DNA of 64,000 bases. Source: Auanema rhodensis (lineage: Eukaryota > Animalia > Nematoda). Shown in pieces: positions 1,858 through 58,406 of this stretch. Under the pieces are notes generated by a model that was given only the letters and a program-made list of their open reading frames with translations, had not been told where the DNA came from and searched no databases. Positions within the stretch are counted from its first letter, which is position 1, and every line of letters starts with the position of its first letter. Both the position numbers and the translations under genes were made by a program. The stretch spans positions 11,780,001 to 11,844,000 of the forward strand of contig OZ059894.1 in assembly GCA_964057225.1 (NCBI GenBank), in the 5' to 3' direction.

Positions 1858-1897
1858 AATAGAACACATATTGAAGATTAATTCGATAAGAACAATT
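1858..1897 (-). pseudogene. Degenerate U2 fragment (nt 39-78) in the spacer of every unit
   Basis: aatagaacacatattgaagattaattcgataagaacaatt vs U2 aatggaacacatatcgaaggttaattcgataagaacgatt: 36/40 identical. Confidence 0.85.
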
Positions 1898-2212
1898 TAT
1901 TGACGTAGAGAATGTTTGTTCCGAAAAACTACAATATTAAACTATAAAAGTAACAAAAGCGTAGAGGCAGCAAAGACATGAATAAACATAAATGTAAATA
2001 CAGAATTACCAGGTAGTACATAAGTATGACAAAAAATTATAAGAAAGCCATGAAAATAGAAGGTTTGTGAACAAATGAGAGGTACATCTTTGATCGTATA
2101 GTCATTTCTAAACCGTTCGTATGCTGCAGCATCGTCATAAGCGTCACTCAAGTTGAATTTCCATGTGTACTACACGATTTTCATTCTTATTGTTACATTC
2201 TTTCCCTGAGGG

Positions 2213-2398
2213 AATGGGCCGTTCCCGCCAGCAGTGCAAGAGCGGGTCGACCCGTGAGGTGGAGCTAGCAAGCCAGCATCTACCTCAAGTCTCAAAAATC
2301 GGTTAACCTTATTGTGAACCAATGGAACACATATCGAAGGTTAATTCGATAAGAACGATTACTACACTTTGATCTTAGCCAAAAGGCCGAGAAGCGAT
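2213..2398 (-). ncRNA. U2: U2 spliceosomal snRNA
   Basis: Reverse complement starts ATCGCTTCTCGGCCTTTTGGCTAAGATCAAAGTGTAGTA (conserved U2 5' end and branch-point recognition GUAGUA). Stem IIa TATCGAA/TTCGATA, stem IIc TTAACCTT/AAGGTTAA, Sm site GATTTTTGA (nt 99-107), loop IV TTGCACT. 3' end approximate. Confidence 0.96.
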
Positions 2399-8489: not shown

Positions 8490-9669
8490 ACAGTAAAAAG
8501 TCCAATCAAGAGAGAAATTTTTTCAACACATAGTTGTTTTTTTTTTAAATATCATTGTTTTTCCTCATAACTCGGTTTAAACTCGTTCTAACCCGTTGAA
8601 ATACGTCTAGAAAGTCTTTATAACATGCATATGTATGATAGAACTTCATATTTATTGTAATAGAAAATTTTATTTTCAGACGTCTTGGTTAACAATGATA
8701 TGTTTTACCCCCTTATAATTTTTATCATAATGTTCCTTATACGGAACGCTCAATGAAACTTGCTTCCAGAAAAATTTCTTTCTATTTTTTCTTCATATGT
8801 ACGTAGATACTATAGAGAACTATGATAGAAAACTTTAACATTCACGAAATCATCATTTCTCATTACGCTACGGAGGTTTAAAAAGCTGTGTTTTACCTTA
8901 TAATAGACCGGAAAACCCTTGTGTTAAAACTGGACCGTTTTTACACATATAAAAATGTCCCGTATTCGGGACCCTAATGTAACTTTTGATTCCCTATATT
9001 TTTTTTCATGAAATTTACAATCTACTGTAGAAAGAAGAATTATTTTTATAAAAACTGTAAATTTTTGAAAAATGAAAACAAAACGAAAACAAAAACAACT
9101 TTTTTTTGAACATTTTCTCACACAAGGGTCCCCCCTTACCTACTTTTTTTCTCATTACTCGTTTCAACCTCATCCGATCACTCTGCAAACATGTTTAATC
9201 GTTCTAACTTGTTGAAATACGTCTTAAAAGTCTAAACAACATGCATATGCATAATAGAAACCACCCGAATAGGCCCCCACGCACTAAACGAGATATATAC
9301 ATTACCAGTATAGTAATAGAACACATATTGAAGATTAATTCGATAAGAACAATTTATTGACGTAGAGAATGTTTGTTCCGAAAAACTACAATATTAAACT
9401 ATAAAAGTAACAAAAGCGTAGAGGCAGCAAAGACATGAATAAACATAAATGTAAATACAGAATTACCAGGTAGTACATAAGTATGACAAAAAATTATAAG
9501 AAAGCCATGAAAATAGAAGGTTTGTGAACAAATGAGAGGTACATCTTTGATCGTATAGTCATTTCTAAACCGTTCGTATGCTGCAGCATCGTCATAAGCG
9601 TCACTCAAGTTGAATTTCCATGTGTACTACACGATTTTCATTCTTATTGTTACATTCTTTCCCTGAGGG

Positions 9670-9818
9670 AATGGGCCGTTCCCGCCAGCAGTGCAAGAGC
9701 GGGTCGACCCGTGAGGTGGAGCTAGCAAGCCAGCATCTACCTCAAGTCTCAAAAATCGGTTAACCTTATTGTGAACCAATGGAACACATATCGAAGGTTA
9801 ATTCGATAAGAACGATTA
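9670..9818 (-). pseudogene. U2: U2 3' part (nt 38-186) downstream of retrotransposon copy 1
   Basis: U2 match stops at aacgatta|atggtttattg. Confidence 0.93.
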
Positions 9819-12800
9819 ATGGTTTATTGAATAACTAATGTTATGATACAATAAATAACCAATAAAAAAGAGCCCAGAATCGGGGAGACGGTATTACCAG
9901 TACAACTTAAAACAGCAAGTAATTAAAAAGTACATAATAAGACACATTGCCAACAGAGGCTAAAACGACTCAAGAGTCGGGGGAGTGGGTTAAAAAAAAT
10001 GAACAAAAAAATGAATATTAAAGCAGAACAATGAGAAATCAAGTGCCGCTATGATCAAACAATTTGAGTGCCTACGGCAATGATGTTAAAAATAAACAAC
10101 AAAATACATGTACCAATGAAGGTCAGAAAGAAAGAAACAAAAGACAAAAATAAGTAATACAAAAAGTAAATACATTACAATCAAATCACAAACAAGTCAA
10201 TTGATAATTTCTTCTTCATATTGCCTTACACCAGAAACATGTTCCACGTAGATATTCCTGGCCCACTTGATGGTATCGGCGACGACGAGCTTCTCCATTA
10301 GCCGGTTGTAGTGGCTGCTGATCTTGAGTGATCGGAGGGCTTGTCCGTTGAGCGGGTCCATAGTTCCAAGCATTCCTACGACATATGCTTCTACACTAGT
10401 CTTATAACCAAGACATTGGTATTGGCTGGCTATGTCAGCATATTTCCTCTCCTTTATCATACGCGCGGCTATCATGGCTTGACGGCGGTTTTCATAGCTC
10501 ACTGTAACATCAACGATACTACAGTGTTTTGCGTCATGATCGACCACTACTATGTCAGGTCGGAGTGTACTATTAATGCCAGGAAGAGGCTGGTTAGTGT
10601 AAACTTCTCCGTTTTTAGGCTCTGGCAGGGCTTTGATAAGACGGTCCACGATGTTGTTGTGGCGGAGTTGGATTGCTCTCGTGTGAGAGTGGCAGTGTCC
10701 AAGAACATGTGCAGCAGTTTCGTTGGAGTAACTACACCTGCGGCACTGTTTGTTTCCTTCTCCGTGTCTTCTACAGCCATTGAGCTGGAGAGTATTGAGT
10801 CGAGCCTTGTGGATGAATCGCCAATCAGCAAACCGTATGAAATCTCCCTTCGCCATAAAGTGATTGGACGCTTTGTTGAGCATTGTGACATCAAAGACTT
10901 TCCCTTGATCCGGTTTTTGAAGAAGGATCCGAAGGTCTTTCAGCCATAATGCACGTCGCAGGCTTCTGTGGCATAGTGAAGGTGTTAACAGTTGGTTGTT
11001 TAGATTGAGTTCTAAACCACTTTCGAGGCATGTCCAGTTAGCGTTGATGAGTTTCTTGAGTTGACGCATCGCTACTCTTACTCTAGTCCAGATGGAGGAA
11101 ACATCAGATGTTTCGGTGTCGAAAATGCCATCAACGGAACCGTTGTAATATGCAGCTGTCTCATCGTTACTGGCTTGACGTTTAATCCTTTTTGATGCTA
11201 CTTTTTTTGAGTCTTGATGCGCAATATCAGCTACTACAAGATCAGATGACTTCAAAAGTTGGTAGGCATGAGTGACTTCACAGACGTCTGACAGGTGTTG
11301 GAGTCGAGAGAGACCAAGTCCGCCGTAGTTAGTTGGCAGGTAGATTGGTTCAGCACTGGCGTTTGGAGGATAGTGCATCCATCTACGGGCACAGCGTTTG
11401 AGTTCTTTGTCAAAGGCGACTAGTTTACTCTTTGGGACGTGGCCATTCGTCATATGAAAATTAAGGCAGGGCATCAGGAAGGTGCGTACTGCGTCAGCTT
11501 TCTGCCATTCAGCAAGTAAGGATTTGTCAATTTTTTCCAAGTGTTGACTCATAATATTCACTGTTGGAACCGCAGACTTATGTAAATGCATTCCAGTAGG
11601 GATTCCCAGGTGGGAGTAGCTGTCGAATTTGCTGAGAGCGGGTAGAGAGGAGCTCTGTAGCATGTATGAGGCTGTTGATATTTTCCCTTTGTCGATCGTC
11701 AAGGTGGCGCATTTCGCTGGTTTGAAGGTCAAGCCTGTGAAATTAGCCGCATTTGATGCTGCGTCCAACATTTTCTGTAGATCTTCTGATGATGAGGAGA
11801 CCAGGGCAAGGTCATCGGCGTACGCTAGCACAGCGATGTTGTGGTTGTGTAGCTTATAGCCAGTAGAGGATTCCAAGATGGTTTTAATTAGAGGTTCAAT
11901 GGCAAGGTTGAACAGGATCGGAGATAGTGGGGATCCTTGTAACACACCTGCATGAACTGGAATGGTCGATGTGAGTCCGGAGCCTGTCTGGATTCTTGTA
12001 GAGGCATCTGTGTATAGAGCTCGTACTCGGGATATTGAGGCTTCAGCCACTCCTGACCATCTTAGAACGTCTAGCAGAGTTTCGTGTGGCAGCGATCCAA
12101 AAGCGTTTGCGAGATCAAGCCAAGCAATTGCAATTTTCTCACGTTTACGTTTAGCGTCCGCAATGGTACTTTGCAACATAAAGTTGTGTTCCATGCATCC
12201 AGCTTTGGCCACAAAGCCCTTTTGGGAGGGAGAAAGTCTTTTTTCTGCTCTTGCCCATGTTAGCAGTCGATGCGTAAGACAAGCTGAGTACGTCTTACCA
12301 ATTGTGCACGAAAGTGCTATTGGTCGCCAGTTGTTAATGTCAGCTTTATCACCTTTCTTATGGATGAGGACGGTGGTCGACTCTTTCCAGGAAAAAGGGA
12401 TGTGTCCTAGCTTGTGTACGGTGTTAAATATCGCTGCTAATATGTGACCTCCTTGGTCAAATTTCTTCCAGTGCGAGTATCGAAGTCCATCAGCTCCTGG
12501 AGCCGTATCGCTGCAACGTCGTATGCGTTCCCAGACTTCCAAAGGGGTGAAAACACCTTCTAATGGGTCGGTACTAGCTGGCAAATCCGGTCTGGTGACT
12601 GTGATGGGGAGGGCTGGGCCTTGACTGCTGTGAACAGAAAGGAAATGTTTTTCAACCTCTGCAGATGGTATGGTGCAGGTTTCACTTTGTTCTCCGAGCA
12701 GTTGTCGAAAGGCTTTCTTCTTGTTGGCCCTCCAGAGCTTCTGGAGCTTCATCGCCTGGGTTTTTTGGTCTTCCTCAGGTTGTGTGTGTGGTCGGCGCCT

Positions 12801-13527
12801 TTGTCGGAAGTTGGGAACTTTGATCATAATGTCAAGAGACTTTCTGATTGCGTCTACCAACTCTTCCAGGACCTGCTCGAGCTCACTTTTGCACACAACC
12901 TTTTTAATTCTATCCACCCAAGTATTTTCAGAGTTTCTATTCGGATCAGGGTCGGCAAAAAATGGTTCTGTACTCGAAACCCTGATCTCGTTGAATATTT
13001 CACTCTCTCGCGGAAGGGGGGAAACTTCGGCCTCTGGGGACAAGTCCAGAATTGGGGCCTCAAACAAGCGTACCGTTGATGGAGATCCTTGTTCCTGTCC
13101 ACTGGATGATGTTTCCTCCATTGTACGCTCCTCCACGGGCGGGGTGGTCGTCCTTGTGCCTGGTGGCCGGGTGTTCCTGATCCTCCGCAATATAGGGCGG
13201 GAACTGGGCTCTCTCGGAGATAGAGGTGAGATCACCACAGTTTCCTCTATGATGCGGAGGCATCCTTCAGCTTTTTTCTGATGGCTTTTAACGGCCTTCA
13301 GATTGCTGGTGAGGCCACAGGCACGGCACTCAAATTCTACTCCGACCTCATGTTCTCTCCGAAGATGGCGGACGAGACCATTGTGGTCTGAGTAGGATCG
13401 CGGAATAGGAGCGCAGATTGAACAAGAAAAAGGGCTCTGAAGAGGCACCTTTAGCTTGTAAAGCCCTTGCTCCATCTCTAGCAGATCTAAAGACTTACGT
13501 AGTACAGTTGCAATATCGATTTAGCCA
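9819..13527 (-). mobile_element. Full-length U2-targeting RLE non-LTR retrotransposon (Utopia-like), copy 1, variant A, 3709 bp
   Basis: Single RT-RLE ORF, 52 nt element-specific 5' UTR, 378 nt 3' UTR ending AATAAACCAT, inserted in U2 before nt 38. Family assigned from target and domain order, not from a database search. Confidence 0.93.
10197..13475 (-). CDS. Non-LTR retrotransposon polyprotein: zinc fingers - reverse transcriptase - CCHC knuckle - restriction-like endonuclease (1092 aa)
   Basis: CSIC...HLRREH and CRAC...H...C zinc fingers; PGADG, WRPIAL, QKGF, LDLANAFGSL, GVLQGSPLSP and YADD RT motifs; CRRC-x8-H-x4-C knuckle; RHN, RPDIV...VDVTV and K..KY endonuclease motifs. Confidence 0.97.
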   Translation of the reverse strand: MEQGLYKLKVPLQSPFSCSICAPIPRSYSDHNGLVRHLRREHEVGVEFECRACGLTSNLKAVKSHQKKAEGCLRIIEETVVISPLSPREPSSRPILRRIRNTRPPGTRTTTPPVEERTMEETSSSGQEQGSPSTVRLFEAPILDLSPEAEVSPLPRESEIFNEIRVSSTEPFFADPDPNRNSENTWVDRIKKVVCKSELEQVLEELVDAIRKSLDIMIKVPNFRQRRRPHTQPEEDQKTQAMKLQKLWRANKKKAFRQLLGEQSETCTIPSAEVEKHFLSVHSSQGPALPITVTRPDLPASTDPLEGVFTPLEVWERIRRCSDTAPGADGLRYSHWKKFDQGGHILAAIFNTVHKLGHIPFSWKESTTVLIHKKGDKADINNWRPIALSCTIGKTYSACLTHRLLTWARAEKRLSPSQKGFVAKAGCMEHNFMLQSTIADAKRKREKIAIAWLDLANAFGSLPHETLLDVLRWSGVAEASISRVRALYTDASTRIQTGSGLTSTIPVHAGVLQGSPLSPILFNLAIEPLIKTILESSTGYKLHNHNIAVLAYADDLALVSSSSEDLQKMLDAASNAANFTGLTFKPAKCATLTIDKGKISTASYMLQSSSLPALSKFDSYSHLGIPTGMHLHKSAVPTVNIMSQHLEKIDKSLLAEWQKADAVRTFLMPCLNFHMTNGHVPKSKLVAFDKELKRCARRWMHYPPNASAEPIYLPTNYGGLGLSRLQHLSDVCEVTHAYQLLKSSDLVVADIAHQDSKKVASKRIKRQASNDETAAYYNGSVDGIFDTETSDVSSIWTRVRVAMRQLKKLINANWTCLESGLELNLNNQLLTPSLCHRSLRRALWLKDLRILLQKPDQGKVFDVTMLNKASNHFMAKGDFIRFADWRFIHKARLNTLQLNGCRRHGEGNKQCRRCSYSNETAAHVLGHCHSHTRAIQLRHNNIVDRLIKALPEPKNGEVYTNQPLPGINSTLRPDIVVVDHDAKHCSIVDVTVSYENRRQAMIAARMIKERKYADIASQYQCLGYKTSVEAYVVGMLGTMDPLNGQALRSLKISSHYNRLMEKLVVADTIKWARNIYVEHVSGVRQYEEEIIN

Positions 13528-13622
13528 TTAACCTTATTGTGAACCAATGGAACACATATCGAAGGTTAATTCGATAAGAACGATTACTACACTTTGATCT
13601 TAGCCAAAAGGCCGAGAAGCGA
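13528..13622 (-). pseudogene. U2: U2 5' part (nt 2-96) upstream of copy 1; promoter deleted
   Basis: ttaaccttattg...gagaagcga, then an abrupt jump to spacer sequence cagtaaaaagtcc. Confidence 0.92.
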
Positions 13623-16102: not shown

Positions 16103-17282
16103 ACAGTAAAAAGTCCAATCAAGAGAGAAATTTTTTCAACACATAGTTGTTTTTTTTTTAAATATCATTGTTTTTCCTCATAACTCGGTTTAAACTCGTT
16201 CTAACCCGTTGAAATACGTCTAGAAAGTCTTTATAACATGCATATGTATGATAGAACTTCATATTTATTGTAATAGAAAATTTTATTTTCAGACGTCTTG
16301 GTTAACAATGATATGTTTTACCCCCTTATAATTTTTATCATAATGTTCCTTATACGGAACGCTCAATGAAACTTGCTTCCAGAAAAATTTCTTTCTATTT
16401 TTTCTTCATATGTACGTAGATACTATAGAGAACTATGATAGAAAACTTTAACATTCACGAAATCATCATTTCTCATTACGCTACGGAGGTTTAAAAAGCT
16501 GTGTTTTACCTTATAATAGACCGGAAAACCCTTGTGTTAAAACTGGACCGTTTTTACACATATAAAAATGTCCCGTATTCGGGACCCTAATGTAACTTTT
16601 GATTCCCTATATTTTTTTTCATGAAATTTACAATCTACTGTAGAAAGAAGAATTATTTTTATAAAAACTGTAAATTTTTGAAAAATGAAAACAAAACGAA
16701 AACAAAAACAACTTTTTTTTGAACATTTTCTCACACAAGGGTCCCCCCTTACCTACTTTTTTTCTCATTACTCGTTTCAACCTCATCCGATCACTCTGCA
16801 AACATGTTTAATCGTTCTAACTTGTTGAAATACGTCTTAAAAGTCTAAACAACATGCATATGCATAATAGAAACCACCCGAATAGGCCCCCACGCACTAA
16901 ACGAGATATATACATTACCAGTATAGTAATAGAACACATATTGAAGATTAATTCGATAAGAACAATTTATTGACGTAGAGAATGTTTGTTCCGAAAAACT
17001 ACAATATTAAACTATAAAAGTAACAAAAGCGTAGAGGCAGCAAAGACATGAATAAACATAAATGTAAATACAGAATTACCAGGTAGTACATAAGTATGAC
17101 AAAAAATTATAAGAAAGCCATGAAAATAGAAGGTTTGTGAACAAATGAGAGGTACATCTTTGATCGTATAGTCATTTCTAAACCGTTCGTATGCTGCAGC
17201 ATCGTCATAAGCGTCACTCAAGTTGAATTTCCATGTGTACTACACGATTTTCATTCTTATTGTTACATTCTTTCCCTGAGGG

Positions 17283-17428
17283 AATAGGCCGTAGCTAGCA
17301 AGCCAGCATCTACCTCAAGTCTCAAAAATCGGTTAACCTTATTGTGAACCAATGGAACACATATCGAAGGTTAATTCGATAAGAACGATTACTACACTTT
17401 GATCTTAGCCAAAAGGCCGAGAAGCGAT
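17283..17428 (-). pseudogene. U2: U2 snRNA pseudogene with a 40 bp deletion (U2 nt 137-176)
   Basis: Reads ggaataggccgt|agctagca; stem-loop IV and the 3' strand of stem III are missing; g>a change at 17286. Confidence 0.92.
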
Positions 17429-18531: not shown

Positions 18532-19711
18532 ACAGTAAAAAGTCCAATCAAGAGAGAAATTTTTTCAACACATAGTTGTTTTTTTTTAAAATATCATTGT
18601 TTTTCCTCATAACTCGGTTTAAACTCGTTCTAACCCGTTGAAATACGTCTAGAAAGTCTTTATAACATGCATATGTATGATAGAACTTCATATTTATTGT
18701 AATAGAAAATTTTATTTTCAGACGTCTTGGTTAACAATGATATGTTTTACCCCCTTATAATTTTTATCATAATGTTCCTTATACGGAACGCTCAATGAAA
18801 CTTGCTTCCAGAAAAATTTCTTTCTATTTTTTCTTCATATGTACGTAGATACTATAGAGAACTATGATAGAAAACTTTAACATTCACGAAATCATCATTT
18901 CTCATTACGCTACGGAGGTTTAAAAAGCTGTGTTTTACCTTATAATAGACCGGAAAACCCTTGTGTTAAAACTGGACCGTTTTTACACATATAAAAATGT
19001 CCCGTATTCGGGACCCTAATGTAACTTTTGATTCCCTATATTTTTTTTCATGAAATTTACAATCTACTGTAGAAAGAAGAATTATTTTTATAAAAACTGT
19101 AAATTTTTGAAAAATGAAAACAAAACGAAAACAAAAACAACTTTTTTTTGAACATTTTCTCACACAAGGGTCCCCCCTTACCTACTTTTTTTCTCATTAC
19201 TCGTTTCAACCTCATCCGATCACTCTGCAAACATGTTTAATCGTTCTAACTTGTTGAAATACGTCTTAAAAGTCTAAACAACATGCATATGCATAATAGA
19301 AACCACCCGAATAGGCCCCCACGCACTAAACGAGATATATACATTACCAGTATAGTAATAGAACACATATTGAAGATTAATTCGATAAGAACAATTTATT
19401 GACGTAGAGAATGTTTGTTCCGAAAAACTACAATATTAAACTATAAAAGTAACAAAAGCGTAGAGGCAGCAAAGACATGAATAAACATAAATGTAAATAC
19501 AGAATTACCAGGTAGTACATAAGTATGACAAAAAATTATAAGAAAGCCATGAAAATAGAAGGTTTGTGAACAAATGAGAGGTACATCTTTGATCGTATAG
19601 TCATTTCTAAACCGTTCGTATGCTGCAGCATCGTCATAAGCGTCACTCAAGTTGAATTTCCATGTGTACTACACGATTTTCATTCTTATTGTTACATTCT
19701 TTCCCTGAGGG

Positions 19712-19860
19712 AATGGGCCGTTCCCGCCAGCAGTGCAAGAGCGGGTCGACCCGTGAGGTGGAGCTAGCAAGCCAGCATCTACCTCAAGTCTCAAAAATCG
19801 GTTAACCTTATTGTGAACCAATGGAACACATATCGAAGGTTAATTCGATAAGAACGATTA
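19712..19860 (-). pseudogene. U2: U2 3' part (nt 38-186) downstream of copy 2
   Basis: Same junction aacgatta|atggttt. Confidence 0.93.
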
Positions 19861-21612
19861 ATGGTTTATTGGATAACTAATGTTATGAAACAATAAATAA
19901 CCAATAAAAAAGAGCCCAGAATCGGGGAGACGGTATTACCAGTACAACTTAAAACAACAAGTGATTAAAAAGTACAAAATAAAACACATTACCAACAGAG
20001 GCTAAAACGACTCAAGAGTCGGGGGAGTGGGTTAAAAAAAGTAATGAATAACAAAAAAAATGAATAATAAAGCAGAACAGTGAAAAGTAAATATCAAGTG
20101 CCGCTATGATCAAACAATTTGAGTGCCTACGGCAATGGTGTTAAAAATAAACAACAAAATACATGTACCAATGAAGGTCAGAAAGAGAGAAAGAAAAAAG
20201 ACAAAAATAAGTAATACAAAAAGTAAAAAATATATTACAATCAAATCACAAACAAGTCAATGGATAATTTCTTCTTCATACTGCCTTACACCAGAAACAT
20301 GTTCCACGTAGATATTCCTGGCCCACTTGATGGTATCGGCGACGACGAGCTTCTCCATTAGCCGGTTGTAGTGGCTGCTGATCTTGAGTGATCGGAGGGC
20401 TTGTACGTTGAGCGGGTCCATAGTTCCAAGCATTCCTACAACATACGCTTCTACACTAGTCTTATAACCAAGACATTGGTATTGGCTGGCTATGTCAGCA
20501 TATTTCCTCTCCTTTATCATACGCGCGGCTATCATGGCTTGTCGGCGGTTTTCATAGCTCACTGTAACATCAACGATACTACAGTGTTTTGCGTCATGAT
20601 CGACCACTACTATGTCAGGTCGGAGTGTACTATTAATGCCAGGAAGAGGCTGGTTAGTGTAAACTTCTCCGTTTTTAGGCTCTGGCAGGGCTTTGATAAG
20701 ACGGTCCACGATGTTGTTGTGGCGGAGTTGGATTGCTCTCGTGTGAAAGTGGCAGTGTCCAAGAACATGTGCAGCAGTTTCGTTGGGGTAACTACACCTG
20801 CGGCACTGTTTGTTTCCTTCTCCGTGTCTTCTACAGCCATTGAGCTGGAGAGTATTAAGTCGAGCCTTGTGGATGAATCGCCAATCAGCAAACCGTATGA
20901 AATCTCCCTTCGCCATAAAGTGATTGGACGCTTTGTTGAGCATTGTGACATCAAAGACTTTCCCTTGATCCGGTTTTTGAAGAAGGATCCGAAGGTCTTT
21001 CAGCCATAATGCACGTCGCAGGCTTCTGTGGCATAGTGAAGGTGTTAACAGTTGGTTGTTTAGATTGAGTTCTAAACCACTTTCGAGGCATGTCCAGTTA
21101 GCGTTGATGAGTTTCTTGAGTTGACGCATCGCTACTCTTACTCTAGTCCAGATGGAGGAAACATCAGATGTTTCGGTGTCGAAAATGCCATCAACGGAAC
21201 CGTTGTAATATGCAGCTGTCTCATCGTTACTGGCTTGACGTTTAATCCTTTTTGATGCTACTTTTATTGAGTCTTGATGCGCAATATCAGCTACTACAAG
21301 ATCAGATGACTTCAAAAGTTGGTAGGCATGAGTGACTTCACAGACGTCTGACAGGTGTTGGAGTCGAGAGAGACCAAGTCCGCCGTAGTTAGTTGGCAGG
21401 TAGATTGGTTCAGCACTGGCGTTTGGAGGATAGTGCATCCATCTACGGGCACAGCGTTTGAGTTCTTTGTCAAAGGCGACTAGTTTACTCTTTGGGACGT
21501 GGCCATTCGTCATATGAAAATTAAGGCAGGGCATCAGGAAGGTGCGTACTGCGTCAGCTTTCTGCCATTCAGCCAGTAAGGATTTGTCAATTTTTTCCAA
21601 GTGTTGACTCAT
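19861..21612 (-). mobile_element. 5'-truncated copy 2 of the same element (variant B), 1752 bp
   Basis: Matches the 3' 1.75 kb of copy 3 with a few SNPs; same 3' junction; 73 bp U2 duplication. Confidence 0.94.
20257..21612 (-). CDS. C-terminal 451 aa fragment of the retrotransposon ORF (post-RT region, zinc knuckle, RLE endonuclease); lacks the RT core
   Basis: Matches the last 451 aa of the copy 3 ORF; begins at an internal Met exactly at the truncation point; expression unknown. Confidence 0.7.
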   Translation of the reverse strand: MSQHLEKIDKSLLAEWQKADAVRTFLMPCLNFHMTNGHVPKSKLVAFDKELKRCARRWMHYPPNASAEPIYLPTNYGGLGLSRLQHLSDVCEVTHAYQLLKSSDLVVADIAHQDSIKVASKRIKRQASNDETAAYYNGSVDGIFDTETSDVSSIWTRVRVAMRQLKKLINANWTCLESGLELNLNNQLLTPSLCHRSLRRALWLKDLRILLQKPDQGKVFDVTMLNKASNHFMAKGDFIRFADWRFIHKARLNTLQLNGCRRHGEGNKQCRRCSYPNETAAHVLGHCHFHTRAIQLRHNNIVDRLIKALPEPKNGEVYTNQPLPGINSTLRPDIVVVDHDAKHCSIVDVTVSYENRRQAMIAARMIKERKYADIASQYQCLGYKTSVEAYVVGMLGTMDPLNVQALRSLKISSHYNRLMEKLVVADTIKWARNIYVEHVSGVRQYEEEIIH

Positions 21613-21722
21613 GTCTCAAAAATCGGTTAACCTTATTGTGAACCAATGGAACACATATCGAAGGTTAATTCGATAAGAACGATTACTACACTTTGATCTT
21701 AGCCAAAAGGCCGAGAAGCGAT
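21613..21722 (-). pseudogene. U2: U2 5' part (nt 1-110) upstream of copy 2
   Basis: gtctcaaaaatcgg...gaagcgat; normal upstream flank. Confidence 0.92.
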
Positions 21723-30294: not shown

Positions 30295-31474
30295 ACAGTA
30301 AAAAGTCCAATCAAGAGAGAAATTTTTTCAACACATAGTTGTTTTTTTTTTAAATATCATTGTTTTTCCTCATAACTCGGTTTAAACTCGTTCTAACCCG
30401 TTGAAATACGTCTAGAAAGTCTTTATAACATGCATATGTATGATAGAACTTCATATTTATTGTAATAGAAAATTTTATTTTCAGACGTCTTGGTTAACAA
30501 TGATATGTTTTACCCCCTTATAATTTTTATCATAATGTTCCTTATACGGAACGCTCAATGAAACTTGCTTCCAGAAAAATTTCTTTCTATTTTTTCTTCA
30601 TATGTACGTAGATACTATAGAGAACTATGATAGAAAACTTTAACATTCACGAAATCATCATTTCTCATTACGCTACGGAGGTTTAAAAAGCTGTGTTTTA
30701 CCTTATAATAGACCGGAAAACCCTTGTGTTAAAACTGGACCGTTTTTACACATATAAAAATGTCCCGTATTCGGGACCCTAATGTAACTTTTGATTCCCT
30801 ATATTTTTTTTCATGAAATTTACAATCTACTGTAGAAAGAAGAATTATTTTTATAAAAACTGTAAATTTTTGAAAAATGAAAACAAAACGAAAACAAAAA
30901 CAACTTTTTTTTGAACATTTTCTCACACAAGGGTCCCCCCTTACCTACTTTTTTTCTCATTACTCGTTTCAACCTCATCCGATCACTCTGCAAACATGTT
31001 TAATCGTTCTAACTTGTTGAAATACGTCTTAAAAGTCTAAACAACATGCATATGCATAATAGAAACCACCCGAATAGGCCCCCACGCACTAAACGAGATA
31101 TATACATTACCAGTATAGTAATAGAACACATATTGAAGATTAATTCGATAAGAACAATTTATTGACGTAGAGAATGTTTGTTCCGAAAAACTACAATATT
31201 AAACTATAAAAGTAACAAAAGCGTAGAGGCAGCAAAGACATGAATAAACATAAATGTAAATACAGAATTACCAGGTAGTACATAAGTATGACAAAAAATT
31301 ATAAGAAAGCCATGAAAATAGAAGGTTTGTGAACAAATGAGAGGTACATCTTTGATCGTATAGTCATTTCTAAACCGTTCGTATGCTGCAGCATCGTCAT
31401 AAGCGTCACTCAAGTTGAATTTCCATGTGTACTACACGATTTTCATTCTTATTGTTACATTCTTTCCCTGAGGG

Positions 31475-31623
31475 AATGGGCCGTTCCCGCCAGCAGTGCA
31501 AGAGCGGGTCGACCCGTGAGGTGGAGCTAGCAAGCCAGCATCTACCTCAAGTCTCAAAAATCGGTTAACCTTATTGTGAACCAATGGAACACATATCGAA
31601 GGTTAATTCGATAAGAACGATTA
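31475..31623 (-). pseudogene. U2: U2 3' part (nt 38-186) downstream of copy 3
   Basis: Same junction aacgatta|atggttt. Confidence 0.93.
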
Positions 31624-34600
31624 ATGGTTTATTGAATAACTAATGTTATGAAACAATAAATAACCAATAAAAAAGAGCCCAGAATCGGGGAGACGGTATT
31701 ACCAGTACAACTTAAAACAGCAAGTGATTAAAAAGTACAAAATAAAACACATTACCAACAGAGGCTAAAACGACTCAAGAGTCGGGGGAGTGGGTTAAAA
31801 AAAGTAATGAATAACAAAAAAAATGAATAATAAAGCAGAACAGTGAAAAGTAAATATCAAGTGCCGCTATGATCAAACAATTTGAGTGCCTACGGCAATG
31901 GTGTTAAAAATAAACAACAAAATACATGTACCAATGAAGGTCAGAAAGAGAGAAAGAAAAAAGACAAAAATAAGTAATACAAAAAGTAAAAAATATATTA
32001 CAATCAAATCACAAACAAGTCAATGGATAATTTCTTCTTCATACTGCCTTACACCAGAAACATGTTCCACGTAGATATTCCTGGCCCACTTGATGGTATC
32101 GGCGACGACGAGCTTCTCCATTAGCCGGTTGTAGTGGCTGCTGATCTTGAGTGATCGGAGGGCTTGTACGTTGAGCGGGTCCATAGTTCCAAGCATTCCT
32201 ACGACATACGCTTCTACACTAGTCTTATAACCAAGACATTGGTATTGGCTGGCTATGTCAGCATATTTCCTCTCCTTTATCATACGCGCGGCTATCATGG
32301 CTTGTCGGCGGTTTTCATAGCTCACTGTAACATCAACGATACTACAGTGTTTTGCGTCATGATCGACCACTACTATGTCAGGTCGGAGTGTACTATTAAT
32401 GCCAGGAAGAGGCTGGTTAGTGTAAACTTCTCCGTTTTTAGGCTCTGGCAGGGCTTTGATAAGACGGTCCACGATGTTGTTGTGGCGGAGTTGGATTGCT
32501 CTCGTGTGAAAGTGGCAGTGTCCAAGAACATGTGCAGCAGTTTCGTTGGGGTAACTACACCTGCGGCACTGTTTGTTTCCTTCTCCGTGTCTTCTACAGC
32601 CATTGAGCTGGAGAGTATTAAGTCGAGCCTTGTGGATGAATCGCCAATCAGCAAACCGTATGAAATCTCCCTTCGCCATAAAGTGATTGGACGCTTTGTT
32701 GAGCATTGTGACATCAAAGACTTTCCCTTGATCCGGTTTTTGAAGAAGGATCCGAAGGTCTTTCAGCCATAATGCACGTCGCAGGCTTCTGTGGCATAGT
32801 GAAGGTGTTAACAGTTGGTTGTTTAGATTGAGTTCTAAACCACTTTCGAGGCATGTCCAGTTAGCGTTGATGAGTTTCTTGAGTTGACGCATCGCTACTC
32901 TTACTCTAGTCCAGATGGAGGAAACATCAGATGTTTCGGTGTCGAAAATGCCATCAACGGAACCGTTGTAATATGCAGCTGTCTCATCGTTACTGGCTTG
33001 ACGTTTAATCCTTTTTGATGCTACTTTTATTGAGTCTTGATGCGCAATATCAGCTACTACAAGATCAGATGACTTCAAAAGTTGGTAGGCATGAGTGACT
33101 TCACAGACGTCTGACAGGTGTTGGAGTCGAGAGAGACCAAGTCCGCCGTAGTTGGTTGGCAGGTAGATTGGTTCAGCACTGGCGTTTGGAGGATAGTGCA
33201 TCCATCTACGGGCACAGCGTTTGAGTTCTTTGTCAAAGGCGACTAGTTTACTCTTTGGGACGTGGCCATTCGTCATATGAAAATTAAGGCAGGGCATCAG
33301 GAAGGTGCGTACTGCGTCAGCTTTCTGCCATTCAGCCAGTAAGGATTTGTCAATTTTTTCCAAGTGTTGACTCATGATATTCACTGTTGGAACCGCAGAC
33401 TTATGTAAATGCATTCCAGTAGGGATTCCCAGGTGGGAGTAGCTGTCAAATTTGCTGAGAGCGGGTAGAAAGCAGCTCTGAAGCATGTATGAGGCTGTTG
33501 ATATTTTCCCTTTGTCGATCGTCAAAGTGGCGCATTTCGCTGGTTTGAAGGTCAAGCCTGTGAAATTAGCCGCATTTGATGCTGCGTCCAACATTTTCTG
33601 TAGATCTTCTGATGATGAGGAGACCAGGGCAAGGTCATCGGCGTACGCTAGCACAGCGATGTTGTGATTGTGTAGCTTATAGCCTGTAGAGGTTTCCAAG
33701 ATGGTTTTAATTAGAGGTTCAATGGCAAGGTTGAACAGGATCGGAGATAGTGGGGATCCTTGTAACACACCTGCGTGAACTGGAATGGTCGAAGTGAGTC
33801 CGGAGCCTGTCTGGATTCTTGTAGAGGCATCTGTGTATAGAGCTCGTACTCGGGATATTGAGGCTTCAGCCATTCCTGACCATCTTAGAACGTCTAGCAG
33901 AGTTTCGTGTGGCAGCGATCCAAAAGCGTTTGCGAGATCAAGCCAAGCAATTGCAATTTTCTCACGTTTACGTTTAGCGTCTGCAATGGTACTTTGCAAC
34001 AAAAAGTTGTGTTCCATGCATCCAGCTTTGGCCACAAAGCCCTTTTGGGAGGGAGAAAGTCTTTTTTCTGCTCTTGCCCATGTTAGCAGTCGATGCGTAA
34101 GACAAGCTGAGTACGTCTTACCAATTGTGCACGAAAGTGCTATTGGTCGCCAGTTGTTAATGTCAGCTTTATCACCTTTCTTATGGATGAGGACGGTGGT
34201 CGACTCTTTCCAGGAAAAAGGGATGTGTCCTAGCTTGTGTACGGTGTTAAATATCGCTGCTAATATGTGACCTCCTTGGTCAAATTTCTTCCAGTGCGAG
34301 TATCGAAGTCCATCAGCTCCTGGAGCCGTATCGCTGCAACGTCGTATGCGTTCCCAGACTTCCAAAGGGGTGAAAACACCTTCTAATGGGTCGGTACTAG
34401 TTGGCAAATCCGGTCTGGTGACTGTGATGGGGAGGGCTGGGCCTTGACTGCTGTGAACAGAAAGGAAGTGTTTTTCAACATCTGCAGATGGTATGGTGCA
34501 GGTTTCACTTTGTTCTCCGAGCAGTTGTCGAAAGGCTTTCTTCTTGTTGGCCCTCCAAAGCTTCTGGATCTTCATCGCCTGGGTTTTTTGGTCTTCCTCA

Positions 34601-35350
34601 GGTTGTGTGTGTGGTCGGCGCCTTTGTCGGAAGTTGGGAACTTTGATCATAATGTCAAGAGACTTTCTGATTGTGTCTATCAACTCTTCCAGGACCTGCT
34701 CGAGCTCACTTTTGCACACTACCTTTTTAATTCTATCCACCCAAATATTTTCAGAGTTTCTATTCGGATCAGGGTCGGCAAAAGATGGTTCTGTACTCGG
34801 AACCCTGATCTCGTTGAATATTTCACTCTCTCGCGGAAGGGGGGAAACTTCGGCCTCTGGGGACAAGTCCAGAATTGGGGCCTCAAACAAGCGTACCGTT
34901 GATGGAGATCCTTGTTCCTGTCCACTGGATGATGTTTCCTCCATTGTACGCTCCTCCACGGGCGGGGTGGTCGTCCTTGTGCCTGGTGGGCGGGTGTTCC
35001 TGATCCTCCGCAATATAGGGCGGGAACTGGGCTCTCTCGGAGATAGAGGTGAGATCACCACAGTTTCCTCTATGATGCGGAGGCATCCTTCAGCTTTTTT
35101 CTGATGGCTTTTAACGGCCTTCAGATTGCTGGTGAGGCCACAGGCACGGCACTCAAATTCTACTCCGACCTCATGTTCTCTCCGAAGATGGCGGACGAGA
35201 CCATTGTGGTCTGAGTAGGATCGCGGAATAGGAGCGCAGATTGAACAAGAAAAAGGGCTCTGAAGAGGCACCTTTAGCTTGTAAAGCCCTTGCTCCATCT
35301 CTAGCAGATCTAAAGACTTACGTAGTACAGTTGCAATATCGATTTAGCCA
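31624..35350 (-). mobile_element. Full-length U2-targeting RLE non-LTR retrotransposon (Utopia-like), copy 3, variant B, 3727 bp
   Basis: Intact ORF, 52 nt 5' UTR, 396 nt 3' UTR, same two junctions as copy 1, upstream U2 flank intact. Confidence 0.93.
32020..35298 (-). CDS. Non-LTR retrotransposon polyprotein ZnF-RT-CCHC-RLE (1092 aa)
   Basis: Same motifs as 10197-13475; about 18 aa differences counted by eye. Confidence 0.97.
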   Translation of the reverse strand: MEQGLYKLKVPLQSPFSCSICAPIPRSYSDHNGLVRHLRREHEVGVEFECRACGLTSNLKAVKSHQKKAEGCLRIIEETVVISPLSPREPSSRPILRRIRNTRPPGTRTTTPPVEERTMEETSSSGQEQGSPSTVRLFEAPILDLSPEAEVSPLPRESEIFNEIRVPSTEPSFADPDPNRNSENIWVDRIKKVVCKSELEQVLEELIDTIRKSLDIMIKVPNFRQRRRPHTQPEEDQKTQAMKIQKLWRANKKKAFRQLLGEQSETCTIPSADVEKHFLSVHSSQGPALPITVTRPDLPTSTDPLEGVFTPLEVWERIRRCSDTAPGADGLRYSHWKKFDQGGHILAAIFNTVHKLGHIPFSWKESTTVLIHKKGDKADINNWRPIALSCTIGKTYSACLTHRLLTWARAEKRLSPSQKGFVAKAGCMEHNFLLQSTIADAKRKREKIAIAWLDLANAFGSLPHETLLDVLRWSGMAEASISRVRALYTDASTRIQTGSGLTSTIPVHAGVLQGSPLSPILFNLAIEPLIKTILETSTGYKLHNHNIAVLAYADDLALVSSSSEDLQKMLDAASNAANFTGLTFKPAKCATLTIDKGKISTASYMLQSCFLPALSKFDSYSHLGIPTGMHLHKSAVPTVNIMSQHLEKIDKSLLAEWQKADAVRTFLMPCLNFHMTNGHVPKSKLVAFDKELKRCARRWMHYPPNASAEPIYLPTNYGGLGLSRLQHLSDVCEVTHAYQLLKSSDLVVADIAHQDSIKVASKRIKRQASNDETAAYYNGSVDGIFDTETSDVSSIWTRVRVAMRQLKKLINANWTCLESGLELNLNNQLLTPSLCHRSLRRALWLKDLRILLQKPDQGKVFDVTMLNKASNHFMAKGDFIRFADWRFIHKARLNTLQLNGCRRHGEGNKQCRRCSYPNETAAHVLGHCHFHTRAIQLRHNNIVDRLIKALPEPKNGEVYTNQPLPGINSTLRPDIVVVDHDAKHCSIVDVTVSYENRRQAMIAARMIKERKYADIASQYQCLGYKTSVEAYVVGMLGTMDPLNVQALRSLKISSHYNRLMEKLVVADTIKWARNIYVEHVSGVRQYEEEIIH

Positions 35351-35446
35351 TTAACCTTATTGTGAACCAATGGAACACATATCGAAGGTTAATTCGATAA
35401 GAACGATTACTACACTTTGATCTTAGCCAAAAGGCCGAGAAGCGAT
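35351..35446 (-). pseudogene. U2: U2 5' part (nt 1-96) fused to copy 3; upstream flank intact
   Basis: gatttagcca|ttaaccttattg...gaagcgat. Confidence 0.92.
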
Positions 35447-35888
35447 ACAGCATAGCCATGAGTATCAAAGACATCAAGCAAATGTATCGTACTTGTTACG
35501 AGTGCACTCTCTCATTTGAATATAAAAGTGTGGTTTGACAATCTTGACTGTACAGGTCATAAATGGCTCATATAAACTGTGGATTTACTCAACTTTTGGA
35601 CTTATTTTTTTCTTATTCGAAGCGCTGCACTTTTTTCTATTCTTTTTATTCAAATACTTGTATATAGTTTTATATGTACGGTTGCAAAGTTTCCGAATAT
35701 TTTATATATTTTTATACAATAATTAGGAGAAGGTTAATACAATGAAATCTCCCAACTTTACAGTGTTTGTATTGCTTACAGTATCTAGAACAACCACTCT
35801 TGTAATATTAGAGCACATATCAATCAACAACTTTTTCTAGTTATCAAAGCTTTTTTATTTCTTCAAGATATTTCAAATAAAATATAAA

Positions 35889-50788: not shown

Positions 50789-50888
50789 AGCTTACGACAC
50801 CCGGGATTCCCAAGCCGTCTCCGATCCAAGTACTAACCGGGCCCAACGTTGCTTGACTGCGTACTTTCAACGTGGTATGGTCGTAAGC
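50789..50888 (-). pseudogene. 5S: 5S rRNA pseudogene with a 19 bp internal deletion (5S nt 31-49)
   Basis: Reads gcttgact|gcgtactt; tgccagatcggacgggatg is missing; 100 nt long. Confidence 0.92.
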
Positions 50889-55724: not shown

Positions 55725-55843
55725 AGCTTACGACACCCGGGATTCCCAAGCCGTCTCCGATCCAAGTACTAACCGGGCCCAACGTTGCTTGACTTGCCAG
55801 ATCGGACGGGATGGCGTACTTTCAACGTGGTATGGTCGTAAGC
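55725..55843 (-). rRNA. 5S: 5S rRNA
   Basis: Copy of 364-482; first of three in this unit. Confidence 0.97.
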
Positions 55844-56084
55844 AATGTTATATTCTTCATTATCAGTTATATCACTCTAAATCTTGTTGTTAATAGTTAG
55901 GACCACAAAGAAAACAACAGGAACAGTAACAAATGAAATGCCCAAACTTTACAGTGTTCGAGTTATTTACAGTATCTAAGACTACCTCTGTCGTGTTATT
56001 AGAGCAAACATTCGATTAACAAAAACTTTTTTTTAGTTATCAAAGCTTTTTTATTTCTTCAAAAAATTTCAAATAAAATATAAA

Positions 56085-56203
56085 AGCTTACGACACCCGG
56101 GATTCCCAAGCCGTCTCCGATCCAAGTACTAACCGGGCCCAACGTTGCTTGACTTGCCAGATCGGACGGGATGGCGTACTTTCAACGTGGTATGGTCGTA
56201 AGC
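56085..56203 (-). rRNA. 5S: 5S rRNA (extra copy in a three-gene unit)
   Basis: Copy of 364-482 with hybrid flanks. Confidence 0.97.
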
Positions 56204-56444
56204 AATGTTATATTCTTCATTATCAGTTATATCACTCTAAATCTTGTTGTTAATAGTTAGGACCACAAAGAAAACAACAGGAACAGTAACAAATGAAATG
56301 CCCAAACTTTACAGTGTTCGAGTTATTTACAGTATCTAAGACTACCTCTGTCGTGTTATTAGAGCAAACATTCGATTAACAACAACTTTTTTTTAGTTAT
56401 CAAAGCTTTTTTATTTCTTCAAAAAATTTCAAATAAAATATAAA

Positions 56445-56563
56445 AGCTTACGACACCCGGGATTCCCAAGCCGTCTCCGATCCAAGTACTAACCGGGCCC
56501 AACGTTGCTTGACTTGCCAGATCGGACGGGATGGCGTACTTTCAACGTGGTATGGTCGTAAGC
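56445..56563 (-). rRNA. 5S: 5S rRNA
   Basis: Copy of 364-482. Confidence 0.97.
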
Positions 56564-56755: not shown

Positions 56756-57935
56756 ACAGTAAAAAGTCCAATCAAGAGAGAAATTTTTTCAACACATAGT
56801 TGTTTTTTTTTTAAATATCATTGTTTTTCCTCATAACTCGGTTTAAACTCGTTCTAACCCGTTGAAATACGTCTAGAAAGTCTTTATAACATGCATATGT
56901 ATGATAGAACTTCATATTTATTGTAATAGAAAATTTTATTTTCAGACGTCTTGGTTAACAATGATATGTTTTACCCCCTTATAATTTTTATCATAATGTT
57001 CCTTATACGGAACGCTCAATGAAACTTGCTTCCAGAAAAATTTCTTTCTATTTTTTCTTCATATGTACGTAGATACTATAGAGAACTATGATAGAAAACT
57101 TTAACATTCACGAAATCATCATTTCTCATTACGCTACGGAGGTTTAAAAAGCTGTGTTTTACCTTATAATAGACCGGAAAACCCTTGTGTTAAAACTGGA
57201 CCGTTTTTACACATATAAAAATGTCCCGTATTCGGGACCCTAATGTAACTTTTGATTCCCTATATTTTTTTTCATGAAATTTACAATCTACTGTAGAAAG
57301 AAGAATTATTTTTATAAAAACTGTAAATTTTTGAAAAATGAAAACAAAACGAAAACAAAAACAACTTTTTTTTGAACATTTTCTCACACAAGGGTCCCCC
57401 CTTACCTACTTTTTTTCTCATTACTCGTTTCAACCTCATCCGATCACTCTGCAAACATGTTTAATCGTTCTAACTTGTTGAAATACGTCTTAAAAGTCTA
57501 AACAACATGCATATGCATAATAGAAACCACCCGAATAGGCCCCCACGCACTAAACGAGATATATACATTACCAGTATAGTAATAGAACACATATTGAAGA
57601 TTAATTCGATAAGAACAATTTATTGACGTAGAGAATGTTTGTTCCGAAAAACTACAATATTAAACTATAAAAGTAACAAAAGCGTAGAGGCAGCAAAGAC
57701 ATGAATAAACATAAATGTAAATACAGAATTACCAGGTAGTACATAAGTATGACAAAAAATTATAAGAAAGCCATGAAAATAGAAGGTTTGTGAACAAATG
57801 AGAGGTACATCTTTGATCGTATAGTCATTTCTAAACCGTTCGTATGCTGCAGCATCGTCATAAGCGTCACTCAAGTTGAATTTCCATGTGTACTACACGA
57901 TTTTCATTCTTATTGTTACATTCTTTCCCTGAGGG

Positions 57936-58084
57936 AATGGGCCGTTCCCGCCAGCAGTGCAAGAGCGGGTCGACCCGTGAGGTGGAGCTAGCAAGCCAGC
58001 ATCTACCTCAAGTCTCAAAAATCGGTTAACCTTATTGTGAACCAATGGAACACATATCGAAGGTTAATTCGATAAGAACGATTA
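57936..58084 (-). pseudogene. U2: U2 3' part (nt 38-186) downstream of copy 4
   Basis: Same junction aacgatta|atggttt. Confidence 0.93.
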
Positions 58085-58285
58085 ATGGTTTATTGAATAA
58101 CTAATGTTATGAAACAATAAATAACCAATAAAAAAGAGCCCAGAATCGGGGAGACGGTATTACCAGTACAACTTAAAACAGCAAGTGATTAAAAAGTACA
58201 AAATAAAACACATTACCAACAGAGGCTAAAACGACTCAAGAGTCGGGGGAGTGGGTTAAAAAAAGTCGGGGGAGTGGGTTAAAAA
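58085..58285 (-). mobile_element. Extremely 5'-truncated copy 4 (3' UTR only, 201 bp including a ~23 bp internal duplication)
   Basis: Matches the terminal 3' UTR of copy 3; same 3' junction; 84 bp U2 duplication. Confidence 0.93.
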
Positions 58286-58406
58286 ATCTACCTCAAGTCT
58301 CAAAAATCGGTTAACCTTATTGTGAACCAATGGAACACATATCGAAGGTTAATTCGATAAGAACGATTACTACACTTTGATCTTAGCCAAAAGGCCGAGA
58401 AGCGAT
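58286..58406 (-). pseudogene. U2: U2 5' part (nt 1-121) upstream of copy 4
   Basis: atctacctcaagtctc...gaagcgat. Confidence 0.92.

What the first reader, a model, noticed from the sequence alone, without database searches (positions are those of the whole stretch)
31475..35446. Retrotransposon that appears to wear the U2 snRNA 5' domain as its own leader: fixed U2(1-96) fusion ending at stem IIc, just before the Sm site
Seen: both full-length copies (variants A and B, ~98% identical in protein) have the same 5' junction, U2 ...AATAAGGTTAA(96)|TGGCTAAATCG, although the insertion site is before U2 nt 38. U2 nt 38-96 (59 bp) is therefore present on both sides. Nt 96 is the last base of stem IIc (TTAACCTT 55-62 pairs with AAGGTTAA 89-96; the element's first T would extend it with A54), and the Sm site (nt 99-107) is excluded. 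The element-specific 5' UTR is only 52 nt, leaving little room for an internal promoter or an R2-type HDV-like ribozyme. Known: R2 is co-transcribed with its rDNA host; Sm-ring assembly drives snRNA cap hypermethylation and nuclear re-import. Inference: the element is transcribed from the host U2 promoter as a U2(1-96)-element chimera that keeps the folded U2 5' domain but lacks the 5' Sm site, and this leader is re-copied at each full-length insertion, giving homology for 5' joining. I cannot tell whether this has already been described for other Utopia families.
Basis: partly seen in the sequence, partly recalled or inferred. Interest (0 to 1): 0.82.

Follow-up and report, generated by a model that had tools for sequence, protein, structure and literature searches.

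The report
U2-headed retrotransposon inside U2 genes
A jumping gene that lives inside a roundworm's U2 snRNA genes always carries the first 96 bases of U2 at its head, and its irregular junctions show that this head travels on the element's own RNA, so it very probably borrows the host gene's promoter: a new twist on a trick already known from the ribosomal-gene element R2.

Summary
The window is a U2 + 2x5S tandem array in a nematode. A Utopia-type retrotransposon (zinc fingers, RT, CCHC, restriction-like endonuclease; 1092 aa) sits in it after U2 nt 37. All 47 full-length 5' ends in the 181-Mb genome are fused to U2 nt 96. None of at least 21 truncated copies is. The eight truncated junctions I could read end at U2 nt 2, 20, 38, 39, 110 or 121, or in spacer.

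Four independent full-length copies, from both sublineages, have a head that begins at U2 nt 1-3. It abuts unrelated upstream spacer after deletions of 38, 1115, 1580 and 2006 bp, once with a run of extra T. The mobile unit is therefore U2(1-96)+element, with an RNA 5' end at the U2 start site. The 59-bp repeat is inherited, not made afresh as a target duplication.

Sister families carry their own fixed heads (nt 79, 89; nt 58 in a distant relative), so nt 96/stem IIc is probably not special in itself. No transcript was seen: the public runs were uninformative. The Sm-site rationale is untested. The scan reached this reading before on other windows of the same array. It is a new variant of the R2/SLACS strategy.

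The parts
35351..35446 (-). Copy 3: U2 nt 1-96 head (leader), preceded at 35447+ by the normal U2 upstream/promoter flank
   Evidence: L006
35299..35350 (-). Copy 3: element-specific 52-nt 5' UTR. In the predicted fold, UACUAC pairs with the U2 GUAGUA (nt 34-39) and UCGAUA pairs with U2 nt 48-53
32020..35298 (-). Copy 3: single ORF of 1092 aa. N-terminal zinc fingers (about 18-72), RT 371-593 (YADD at 552), CCHC 911-928, RPD...D...K restriction-like endonuclease from 972
31624..32019 (-). Copy 3: 3' UTR ending ...CAATAAACCAT (AATAAA lies 4 nt from the end)
31471..31623 (-). Copy 3: downstream remainder of the target gene, U2 nt 38-190. Positions 31565-31623 repeat the 59 bp (U2 38-96) also present at 35351-35409
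9666..13622 (-). Copy 1 (other sublineage): U2 38-190 (9666-9818), element (9819-13527), head U2 nt 2/3-96 (13528-13622). The head abuts spacer DNA directly: 1115 bp is missing, comprising (TA)n, both 5S genes, the U2 promoter and U2 nt 1
   Evidence: (L007)
19708..21722 (-). Copy 2: 5'-truncated element (19861-21612) between U2 1-110 (21613-21722) and U2 38-190 (19708-19860); 73-bp duplication
57932..58406 (-). Copy 4: about 200 nt of 3' UTR with an internal 23-nt repeat (58085-58285), between U2 1-121 (58286-58406) and U2 38-190 (57932-58084); 84-bp duplication

Best explanation
This is a Utopia-type, restriction-like-endonuclease non-LTR retrotransposon that lives in the U2 snRNA genes of a nematode. 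Its mobile RNA is a chimera that begins at the U2 transcription start and runs through U2 nt 1-96 into the element.

Proposed cycle:
1. The upstream U2 promoter of the occupied gene drives transcription from U2 +1 (inferred).
2. The protein nicks the bottom strand of another U2 gene between nt 37 and 38 and reverse-transcribes from the element's 3' end. The precise 3' junction is shown; the mechanism is inferred by analogy to R2.
3. A full-length cDNA ends with the complement of U2 1-96. This anneals to the upstream half of the target and primes second-strand synthesis. Every full-length copy therefore gets the same U2-96|element junction and an inherited 59-bp pseudo target-site duplication (U2 38-96).
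4. If annealing fails, the cDNA end is joined to DNA further upstream. This leaves a head that starts at U2 nt 1-3 next to unrelated spacer.
5. If reverse transcription aborts, the truncated cDNA is joined by chance. The result ranges from deletions of target U2 sequence to duplications of up to 84 bp.

Because the head contains the nick site, each full-length insertion rebuilds a target. This explains the nested and tandem copies.
For: - 47/47 full-length 5' ends genome-wide are fused at U2 nt 96. I read 32 of them with flanks: 10 haplotypes in two sublineages.
- There are 68 exact 3' junctions against 47 5' starts, so at least 21 copies are truncated. No truncated copy is joined at nt 96.
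- The eight truncated junctions I read end at U2 nt 2, 20, 38, 39, 110 or 121, in spacer with AT filler, or in the 3' flank of the upstream unit's U2.
- Four independent, collinear upstream deletions of 38, 1115, 1580 and 2006 bp all end at U2 nt 1-3 of the head (L030, L007, L023/25, L022/26). One carries about 9 extra T. They come from both sublineages. A rough chance estimate for four end points falling in a 3-nt window of the 96-nt head is about 1e-6 (my own arithmetic).
- The non-autonomous X/X' elements (no ORF above 71 aa) always have a head ending at nt 79 (6/6). Their 3' tail matches fam2, whose head ends at nt 89.
- Tandem and nested copies are separated by U2 38-96.
- The UTR is only 52 nt, and no Rfam ribozyme was found.
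- Precedent: R2 elements whose RNA keeps upstream 28S sequence have uniform 5' junctions, while the others vary (PMC3774820; PMC13580325).
Against: - No RNA evidence. The only public runs holding the element are three 20-Mb libraries not on record as RNA, with sparse low-depth contigs.
- An unknown share of the 16 'canonical' copies I read may be array duplicates rather than separate insertions. The inverted duplicate pairs L021/27, L022/26 and L023/25 show that such copying happens.
- All U2 copies are identical, so no marker SNP shows transfer of the head.
- snRNA-type Pol II promoters normally give short transcripts; a 3.8-kb product is an assumption.
- X and X' share the nt-79 end point although their first 11 nt differ. 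A fixed top-strand cut would also explain that.
Confidence: 0.8

Rival explanations
1. True long target-site duplication. The element RNA has no U2 head. At each full-length insertion the endonuclease cuts the top strand at U2 96/97, which is 59 bp downstream of the bottom-strand nick.
For: - Truncated copies with 73- and 84-bp duplications show that the top strand can be broken or copied downstream of the nick.
- Reptile Utopia families are reported with 20-bp TSDs (PMC4640811).
- The distant relative L055 has a 21-bp duplication.
- X and X' share an nt-79 end point despite different first bases.
- Long duplications are known for other RLE elements (R9, SLACS; from my own memory, not checked here).
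Against: - A fixed staggered cut should give the same duplication to truncated copies. None of at least 21 has it, and the eight I read vary from a deletion of 35 bp or more to a duplication of 84 bp.
- It cannot explain four heads that start at U2 nt 1-3 next to unrelated DNA.
- X and fam2 share a tail type but differ in end point.
Confidence: 0.08
2. One ancestral insertion was multiplied by unequal crossing-over and segmental duplication of the array. The identical junction would then be identity by descent, not repeated retrotransposition.
For: The setting is a tandem array. Inverted duplicate pairs exist (L021/27, L022/26, L023/25), and many copies share a haplotype.
Against: - There are ten haplotypes in two sublineages.
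- The upstream contexts are distinct: canonical, tandem, nested behind X/fam2, and four different deletions.
- At least 21 truncated copies with different junctions show ongoing retrotransposition.
- This reading does not explain the nt 1-3 boundaries.
Confidence: 0.04
3. The head acts as an internal promoter or was captured by template switching. Either U2 1-96 was picked up once when the RT jumped onto a U2 RNA and now drives its own transcription from +1, or the upstream host promoter is not needed.
For: The mobile unit starts at U2 +1, which a self-contained promoter would also give. SINEs with snRNA-derived heads exist (PMC4494074, abstract only).
Against: - Known U2 promoters are upstream elements (general knowledge).
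- A jump onto mature U2 RNA should join at its 3' end, not at nt 96.
- 16 of the 30 copies read keep the host promoter.
Confidence: 0.05

Closest known systems
Utopia (U2 snRNA gene-targeting RLE non-LTR retrotransposons; Kojima & Jurka 2015, PMC4640811)
   Same: Single ORF with zinc fingers, RT, CCHC and a restriction-like endonuclease. Precise 3' junction at the same conserved U2 site (downstream U2 starts at nt 38/39). Occasional tandem copies, and several families co-resident in one U2 array.
   Different: The paper reports no TSD for arthropod families, 20 bp for reptile families and apparent loss of U2 1-38 in oomycetes. It does not use the words 'promoter' or 'read-through', so it does not discuss promoter use. 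Here there is a fixed 96-nt U2 head with a 59-bp inherited repeat, and footprints show the head is part of the RNA.
R2 elements whose ribozyme cuts upstream in 28S rRNA (Eickbush et al. 2013, PMC3774820)
   Same: Co-transcription with the host gene. Host sequence retained on the RNA 5' end gives uniform full-length 5' junctions, because the cDNA anneals to the upstream target. Junctions vary when that homology is absent.
   Different: R2 uses Pol I read-through plus an HDV-like self-cleaving ribozyme, and keeps at most 36 nt lying only upstream of the insertion site, so nothing is duplicated. Here the RNA 5' end is the host gene's own start site and no ribozyme was detected. The head also spans the nick site (37 nt upstream plus 59 nt downstream), which creates a pseudo-TSD and rebuilds the target.
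SLACS/CZAR/CRE elements in trypanosomatid spliced-leader RNA genes
   Same: RLE non-LTR elements inserted at a fixed position near the 5' end of a small Pol II-transcribed RNA gene in a tandem array (PMC12278014). From my memory, not checked here: they are flanked by a 49-bp duplication and are transcribed from the SL gene start.
   Different: Different clade and host. They have a poly(A) tail and only about 11 nt of host RNA ahead of the insertion site. Whether their duplication is inherited on the RNA has not, to my knowledge, been framed this way.
R9 of bdelloid rotifers (126-bp TSD; from memory)
   Same: An RLE element with an unusually long repeat of target sequence on both sides.
   Different: R9's repeat is interpreted as a true duplication made at insertion. 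Here truncated copies lack the 59-bp repeat, so it is not made by a fixed staggered cut.

Membership tests
Utopia | Non-LTR retrotransposon with one ORF: N-terminal zinc finger(s), RT, C-terminal zinc finger and a PD..D/ExK restriction-like endonuclease | tested here: met
   Pfam RVT_1 at E 5e-28, residues 371-593. C2H2-like motifs at 18-42 and 50-72, YADD at 552, CCHC at 911-928, RPD(972)...D...K.
Utopia | 3' end joined to U2 at the conserved site (downstream U2 starts at about nt 39) | tested here: met
   All four window copies end ...AATAAACCAT|TAATCG, with U2 from nt 38. The genome holds 68 exact 3' junctions, all in the U2 array.
Utopia | RT groups with Utopia in a phylogeny, apart from R2, NeSL and others | not tested
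   No curated Utopia reference proteins were available. The best homologues are 55-56% identical metagenome proteins and 38-44% identical unnamed proteins of nematodes, a scorpion, turtles and Daphnia. That fits the published host range but is not a tree.
Utopia | Published 5' junction behaviour (none or 20-bp TSD) | tested here: not met
   Fixed U2 1-96 head with a 59-bp repeat. The distant relative L055 shows a 21-bp repeat.
R2 | Insertion in 28S rDNA | tested here: not met
   All copies lie in U2 genes of the U2/5S array.
R2 | HDV-like self-cleaving ribozyme at the 5' end | tested here: inconclusive
   No Rfam family other than U2 at E<=1 across 31600-35460. The UTR is only 52 nt. Divergent ribozymes can escape Rfam.
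Elements with a true long TSD (R9-like) | The same duplication is made from the target at every insertion, truncated copies included | tested here: not met
   Truncated copies end at U2 nt 2, 20, 38, 39, 110, 121 or in spacer. None of at least 21 ends at nt 96.
Host-promoter co-transcribed site-specific elements (working like R2/SLACS) | The 5' end of the mobile RNA lies in host gene sequence | tested here: met
   Four independent heads begin at U2 nt 1-3 beside unrelated DNA. This is a genomic footprint only; the RNA itself was not observed.

The most novel reading that the evidence does not exclude
The U2 head is a selected functional RNA module, not just a hitch-hiked promoter footprint.

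- All lineages stop before the Sm site (nt 58, 79, 89, 96). The capped Pol II transcript would therefore avoid the snRNP import pathway.
- The short UTR masks the branch-point-binding GUAGUA and locks the stem IIc form.
- In this trans-splicing host, a UCUUUAG|A 12 nt before the ATG may let SL1 trans-splicing remove the head to make the mRNA, while unspliced RNA serves as the template.

By extension, the '20-bp TSD' of reptile Utopia and the long repeats of other elements in small Pol II RNA genes may be inherited RNA heads too.
Probability: 0.3. Interest if true: 0.72.

Novelty: new variant of a known kind. Interest (0 to 1): 0.55.

Why it matters
- It would show that a site-specific retrotransposon can use a Pol II snRNA gene as R2 uses rDNA, taking both its promoter and its 5' homology arm from the host gene, and doing so without a ribozyme.
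- It shows that an apparent long target-site duplication can be carried on the RNA. This changes how top-strand cleavage sites are inferred from flanks in Utopia and similar elements.
- The head rebuilds the target site, which explains how several families persist in a limited array.
- For retrotransposon-based gene-insertion tools, it is a natural example of a template with a long 5' homology arm spanning the nick.

Tried and rejected
- RNA evidence: the look-up of sequencing runs returned only three 20-Mb runs not on record as RNA. Read laying on window 31540-35409 gave a few low-depth contigs, plus one contig that is the X element with its nt-79 junction. This says nothing on transcription. 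By design I left U2 nt 1-37 out of that stretch because it is almost identical to human U2.
I therefore read flanks of only 32 of the 47 full-length copies and 8 of at least 21 truncated ones. Exact-pattern counts covered the rest.
- Relatives: contigs of P0001 (L051), P0009 (L052, scorpion), P0034 (L053) and P0017 (L054) show no flanking U2. P0002 and P0011 gave no DNA. Only L055 was informative.
- Wasted or failed calls: one search used too loose a pattern; some searches were syntax or size errors.
- Considered and rejected: a fixed 59-bp TSD, pure array amplification, and a template switch onto mature U2 (see the rival explanations).
It hit about 3450 tandem sites against 0 in the controls.
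Full report
**Setting.** The window is a tandem array with a unit of about 2.48 kb. Each unit holds one U2 snRNA gene and two 5S rRNA genes, all on the minus strand. There are 17 intact U2 genes plus interrupted ones. The window lies at C1:11,780,001-11,844,000 of a 181-Mb assembly.

**The observation.** With the 190-nt U2 of window 2209-2398 as reference, four insertions share one 3' junction: the element ends ...AATAAACCAT and is joined to U2 nt 38.
- Copy 3, the finding, reads U2(1-96), element (3727 nt), U2(38-190) over 31471-35446.
- Copy 1 (9666-13622) has the same nt-96 junction.
- U2 38-96 is therefore present on both sides of each.
- The ORF starts at element nt 53 and is 1092 aa, intact in both copies, with 18 differences.
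- The ORF carries N-terminal zinc fingers, RT (Pfam RVT_1, E 5e-28), CCHC and an RPD...D...K restriction-like endonuclease.
- TTAACCTT (55-62) and AAGGTTAA (89-96) are exact complements. In the predicted fold this stem IIc helix forms and is extended by A54:U97.
- The Sm-type AUUUUUG (100-106) lies outside the head.
- Rfam finds nothing but U2 in the region at E<=1.

**Genome-wide junctions.**
- The element's first 26 nt occur 47 times, all in the C1 array between 10.94 and 12.22 Mb. All 47 are preceded by U2 nt 83-96.
- U2(73-96) followed by anything other than U2 nt 97-98 occurs nowhere else. The three extra hits are variant U2 genes on C8.
- There are 68 exact 3' junctions, so at least 21 copies are 5'-truncated, and none of them is joined at nt 96.
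- The eight truncated junctions I could read vary widely:
  - U2 nt 2 plus a T run;
  - nt 20;
  - nt 38;
  - nt 39;
  - nt 110 (a 73-bp repeat);
  - nt 121 (an 84-bp repeat);
  - spacer with an AT-rich filler;
  - the 3' flank of the upstream unit's U2.
- A fixed staggered cut would give truncated copies the same 59-bp repeat. It does not. The nt-96 boundary therefore belongs to the full-length RNA, not to target cleavage.

**The 5' edge of the head.** I read 30 full-length copies with 1.5-kb flanks.
- Sixteen have the normal promoter flank plus U2 1-96.
- Several are tandem or nested: the 3' end of this or another family, then U2 38/39-96, then the element. This is expected, because the head contains the nick site.
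- Four independent copies have a head beginning at U2 nt 1-3, directly abutting spacer of the preceding unit. These are L007 (window copy 1), L022/26, L023/25 and L030.
- In all four the flank is collinear with the preceding unit. The missing stretches are 1115, 2006, 1580 and 38 bp.
- L022/26 carries about 9 extra T at the joint, as reverse-transcriptase-made 5' junctions often do.
- The four belong to both sublineages.
- Four end points in a 3-nt window of a 96-nt head have a chance of roughly 1e-6 (my arithmetic).
- The simplest reading is that the retrotransposed unit begins at the U2 transcription start.

**Independence of the copies.** Over the first 1700 nt, the 32 copies I read fall into 10 haplotypes in two groups about 1.1% apart. 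Some pairs are inverted segmental duplicates. The variety of contexts, and the many truncated copies, rule out simple array amplification as the whole story.

**Sister families in the same array.**
- X and X' are non-autonomous (865 and 787 bp, no ORF above 71 aa). Their head ends at nt 79 in 6 of 6 cases.
- fam2 is an autonomous family, 62-67% identical to this element at the nucleotide level. Its ORF here is broken by one stop. Its head ends at nt 89, seen once.
- The last 75 nt of X' match the fam2 tail at 82%. The end point thus follows the RNA lineage rather than the protein.
- A distant relative (L055, 42% amino-acid identity, a Logan contig) has U2 of about nt 38-58 on both sides. That matches the '20-bp TSD' reported for reptile Utopia.
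- All the heads stop before the Sm site. Since they end at different places, nt 96/stem IIc is probably not special in itself.

**Mechanism.** The pattern matches R2. Where host rRNA sequence stays on the RNA 5' end, 5' junctions are uniform because the cDNA anneals to the upstream target; otherwise they vary (PMC3774820; PMC13580325). Two things differ here. The RNA 5' end is the host gene's own start site, so no ribozyme is needed. And the head spans the nick (37 nt upstream plus 59 nt downstream), so it is inherited as a pseudo-TSD and rebuilds a target. Transcription from the U2 promoter, the annealing step and the fate of the RNA are all inferred.

**What is missing.** No RNA was observed; the public runs were tiny and not on record as RNA. 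All U2 copies are identical, so there is no marker in the head. I did not run an RT phylogeny against curated Utopia references.

**Literature.** The Utopia paper reports no TSD in arthropods and 20 bp in reptiles. It never uses the words 'promoter' or 'read-through'. Two further full-text searches found no description of a U2-headed Utopia.

**Earlier scan notes.** Notes on other windows of the same array reached the same reading. I reached mine before reading them and tested the claims myself.

**Verdict.** It is a new variant of a known strategy, and of moderate interest.

Noticed in passing
window 1858-1910 and the same place in every unit (e.g. 4359-4374, 6846-6861): Every array unit holds a fossil junction: a fam2/X-like 3' tail (...CTACGTCAATAA), then a 90%-identical U2 39-78 piece, then an X'-like head (CTATACTGG...). 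An old tandem insertion has therefore been fixed across the whole array.
   Followed up: partly
window 35299-35350; L052:5984-6001: The 52-nt UTR holds UACUAC and UCGAUA. In the predicted fold these pair with the U2 GUAGUA (nt 34-39) and with nt 48-53 of the head (MFE -38.1 kcal/mol, z -2.66). The heads of X (ACTACAC), fam2 (ACTACGTA) and L055 (CTACAC) have similar tracts. A scorpion relative has an exact 18-nt antisense copy of U2 18-35 right before its ORF.
   Followed up: partly
window 31624-31640, 9819-9835; L055 3' end; fam2/X 3' ends in L037/L032: All families, including the distant relative, have AATAAA within about 10 nt of the 3' junction. This could be a poly(A) signal that would place the RNA 3' end a few bases into the downstream U2.
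   Followed up: no
window 35311-35317 (minus strand): UCUUUAG|A lies 12 nt upstream of the ATG and resembles a nematode 3' splice/trans-splice acceptor. In this SL1-using host it could separate an mRNA form from the template form.
   Followed up: no
window 17266-17428: A U2 gene with an internal 27-nt deletion in its 3' domain (it matches nt 1-136, then resumes near nt 164). No element is attached.
   Followed up: no
window 58190-58285: The 5' junction of truncated copy 4 has a direct 23-nt repeat of element sequence (TTTTTTTAACCCACTCCCCCGAC). This suggests template slippage or a template jump during junction formation.
   Followed up: no
G000:C1 about 11.22-11.30 Mb (L021-L028): Part of the array is an inverted segmental duplication; the pairs L021/27, L022/26 and L023/25 are mirror copies. 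L021/27 also have an inverted element piece (nt 998-2447) joined to head nt 34.
   Followed up: partly
G000:C8:5695088-5695129, C8:10318807 and C8:10330261 (L056): Dispersed variant U2 genes lie outside the array (nt 97-98 TT, or nt 98 G). None carries an element junction.
   Followed up: partly
L037:1685-5622 (C1:10961685-10965622): This fam2 copy has its ORF split by a single in-frame stop (820 + 273 aa). A truncated copy of the main family is inserted in its head with no duplication (U2 1-38 | element | U2 38-89).
   Followed up: partly
window 50789-50888; 55725-56563: Irregular 5S content: one truncated 5S (100 nt) and one unit with three 5S genes. L001's upstream unit lacks both 5S genes.
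   Followed up: no
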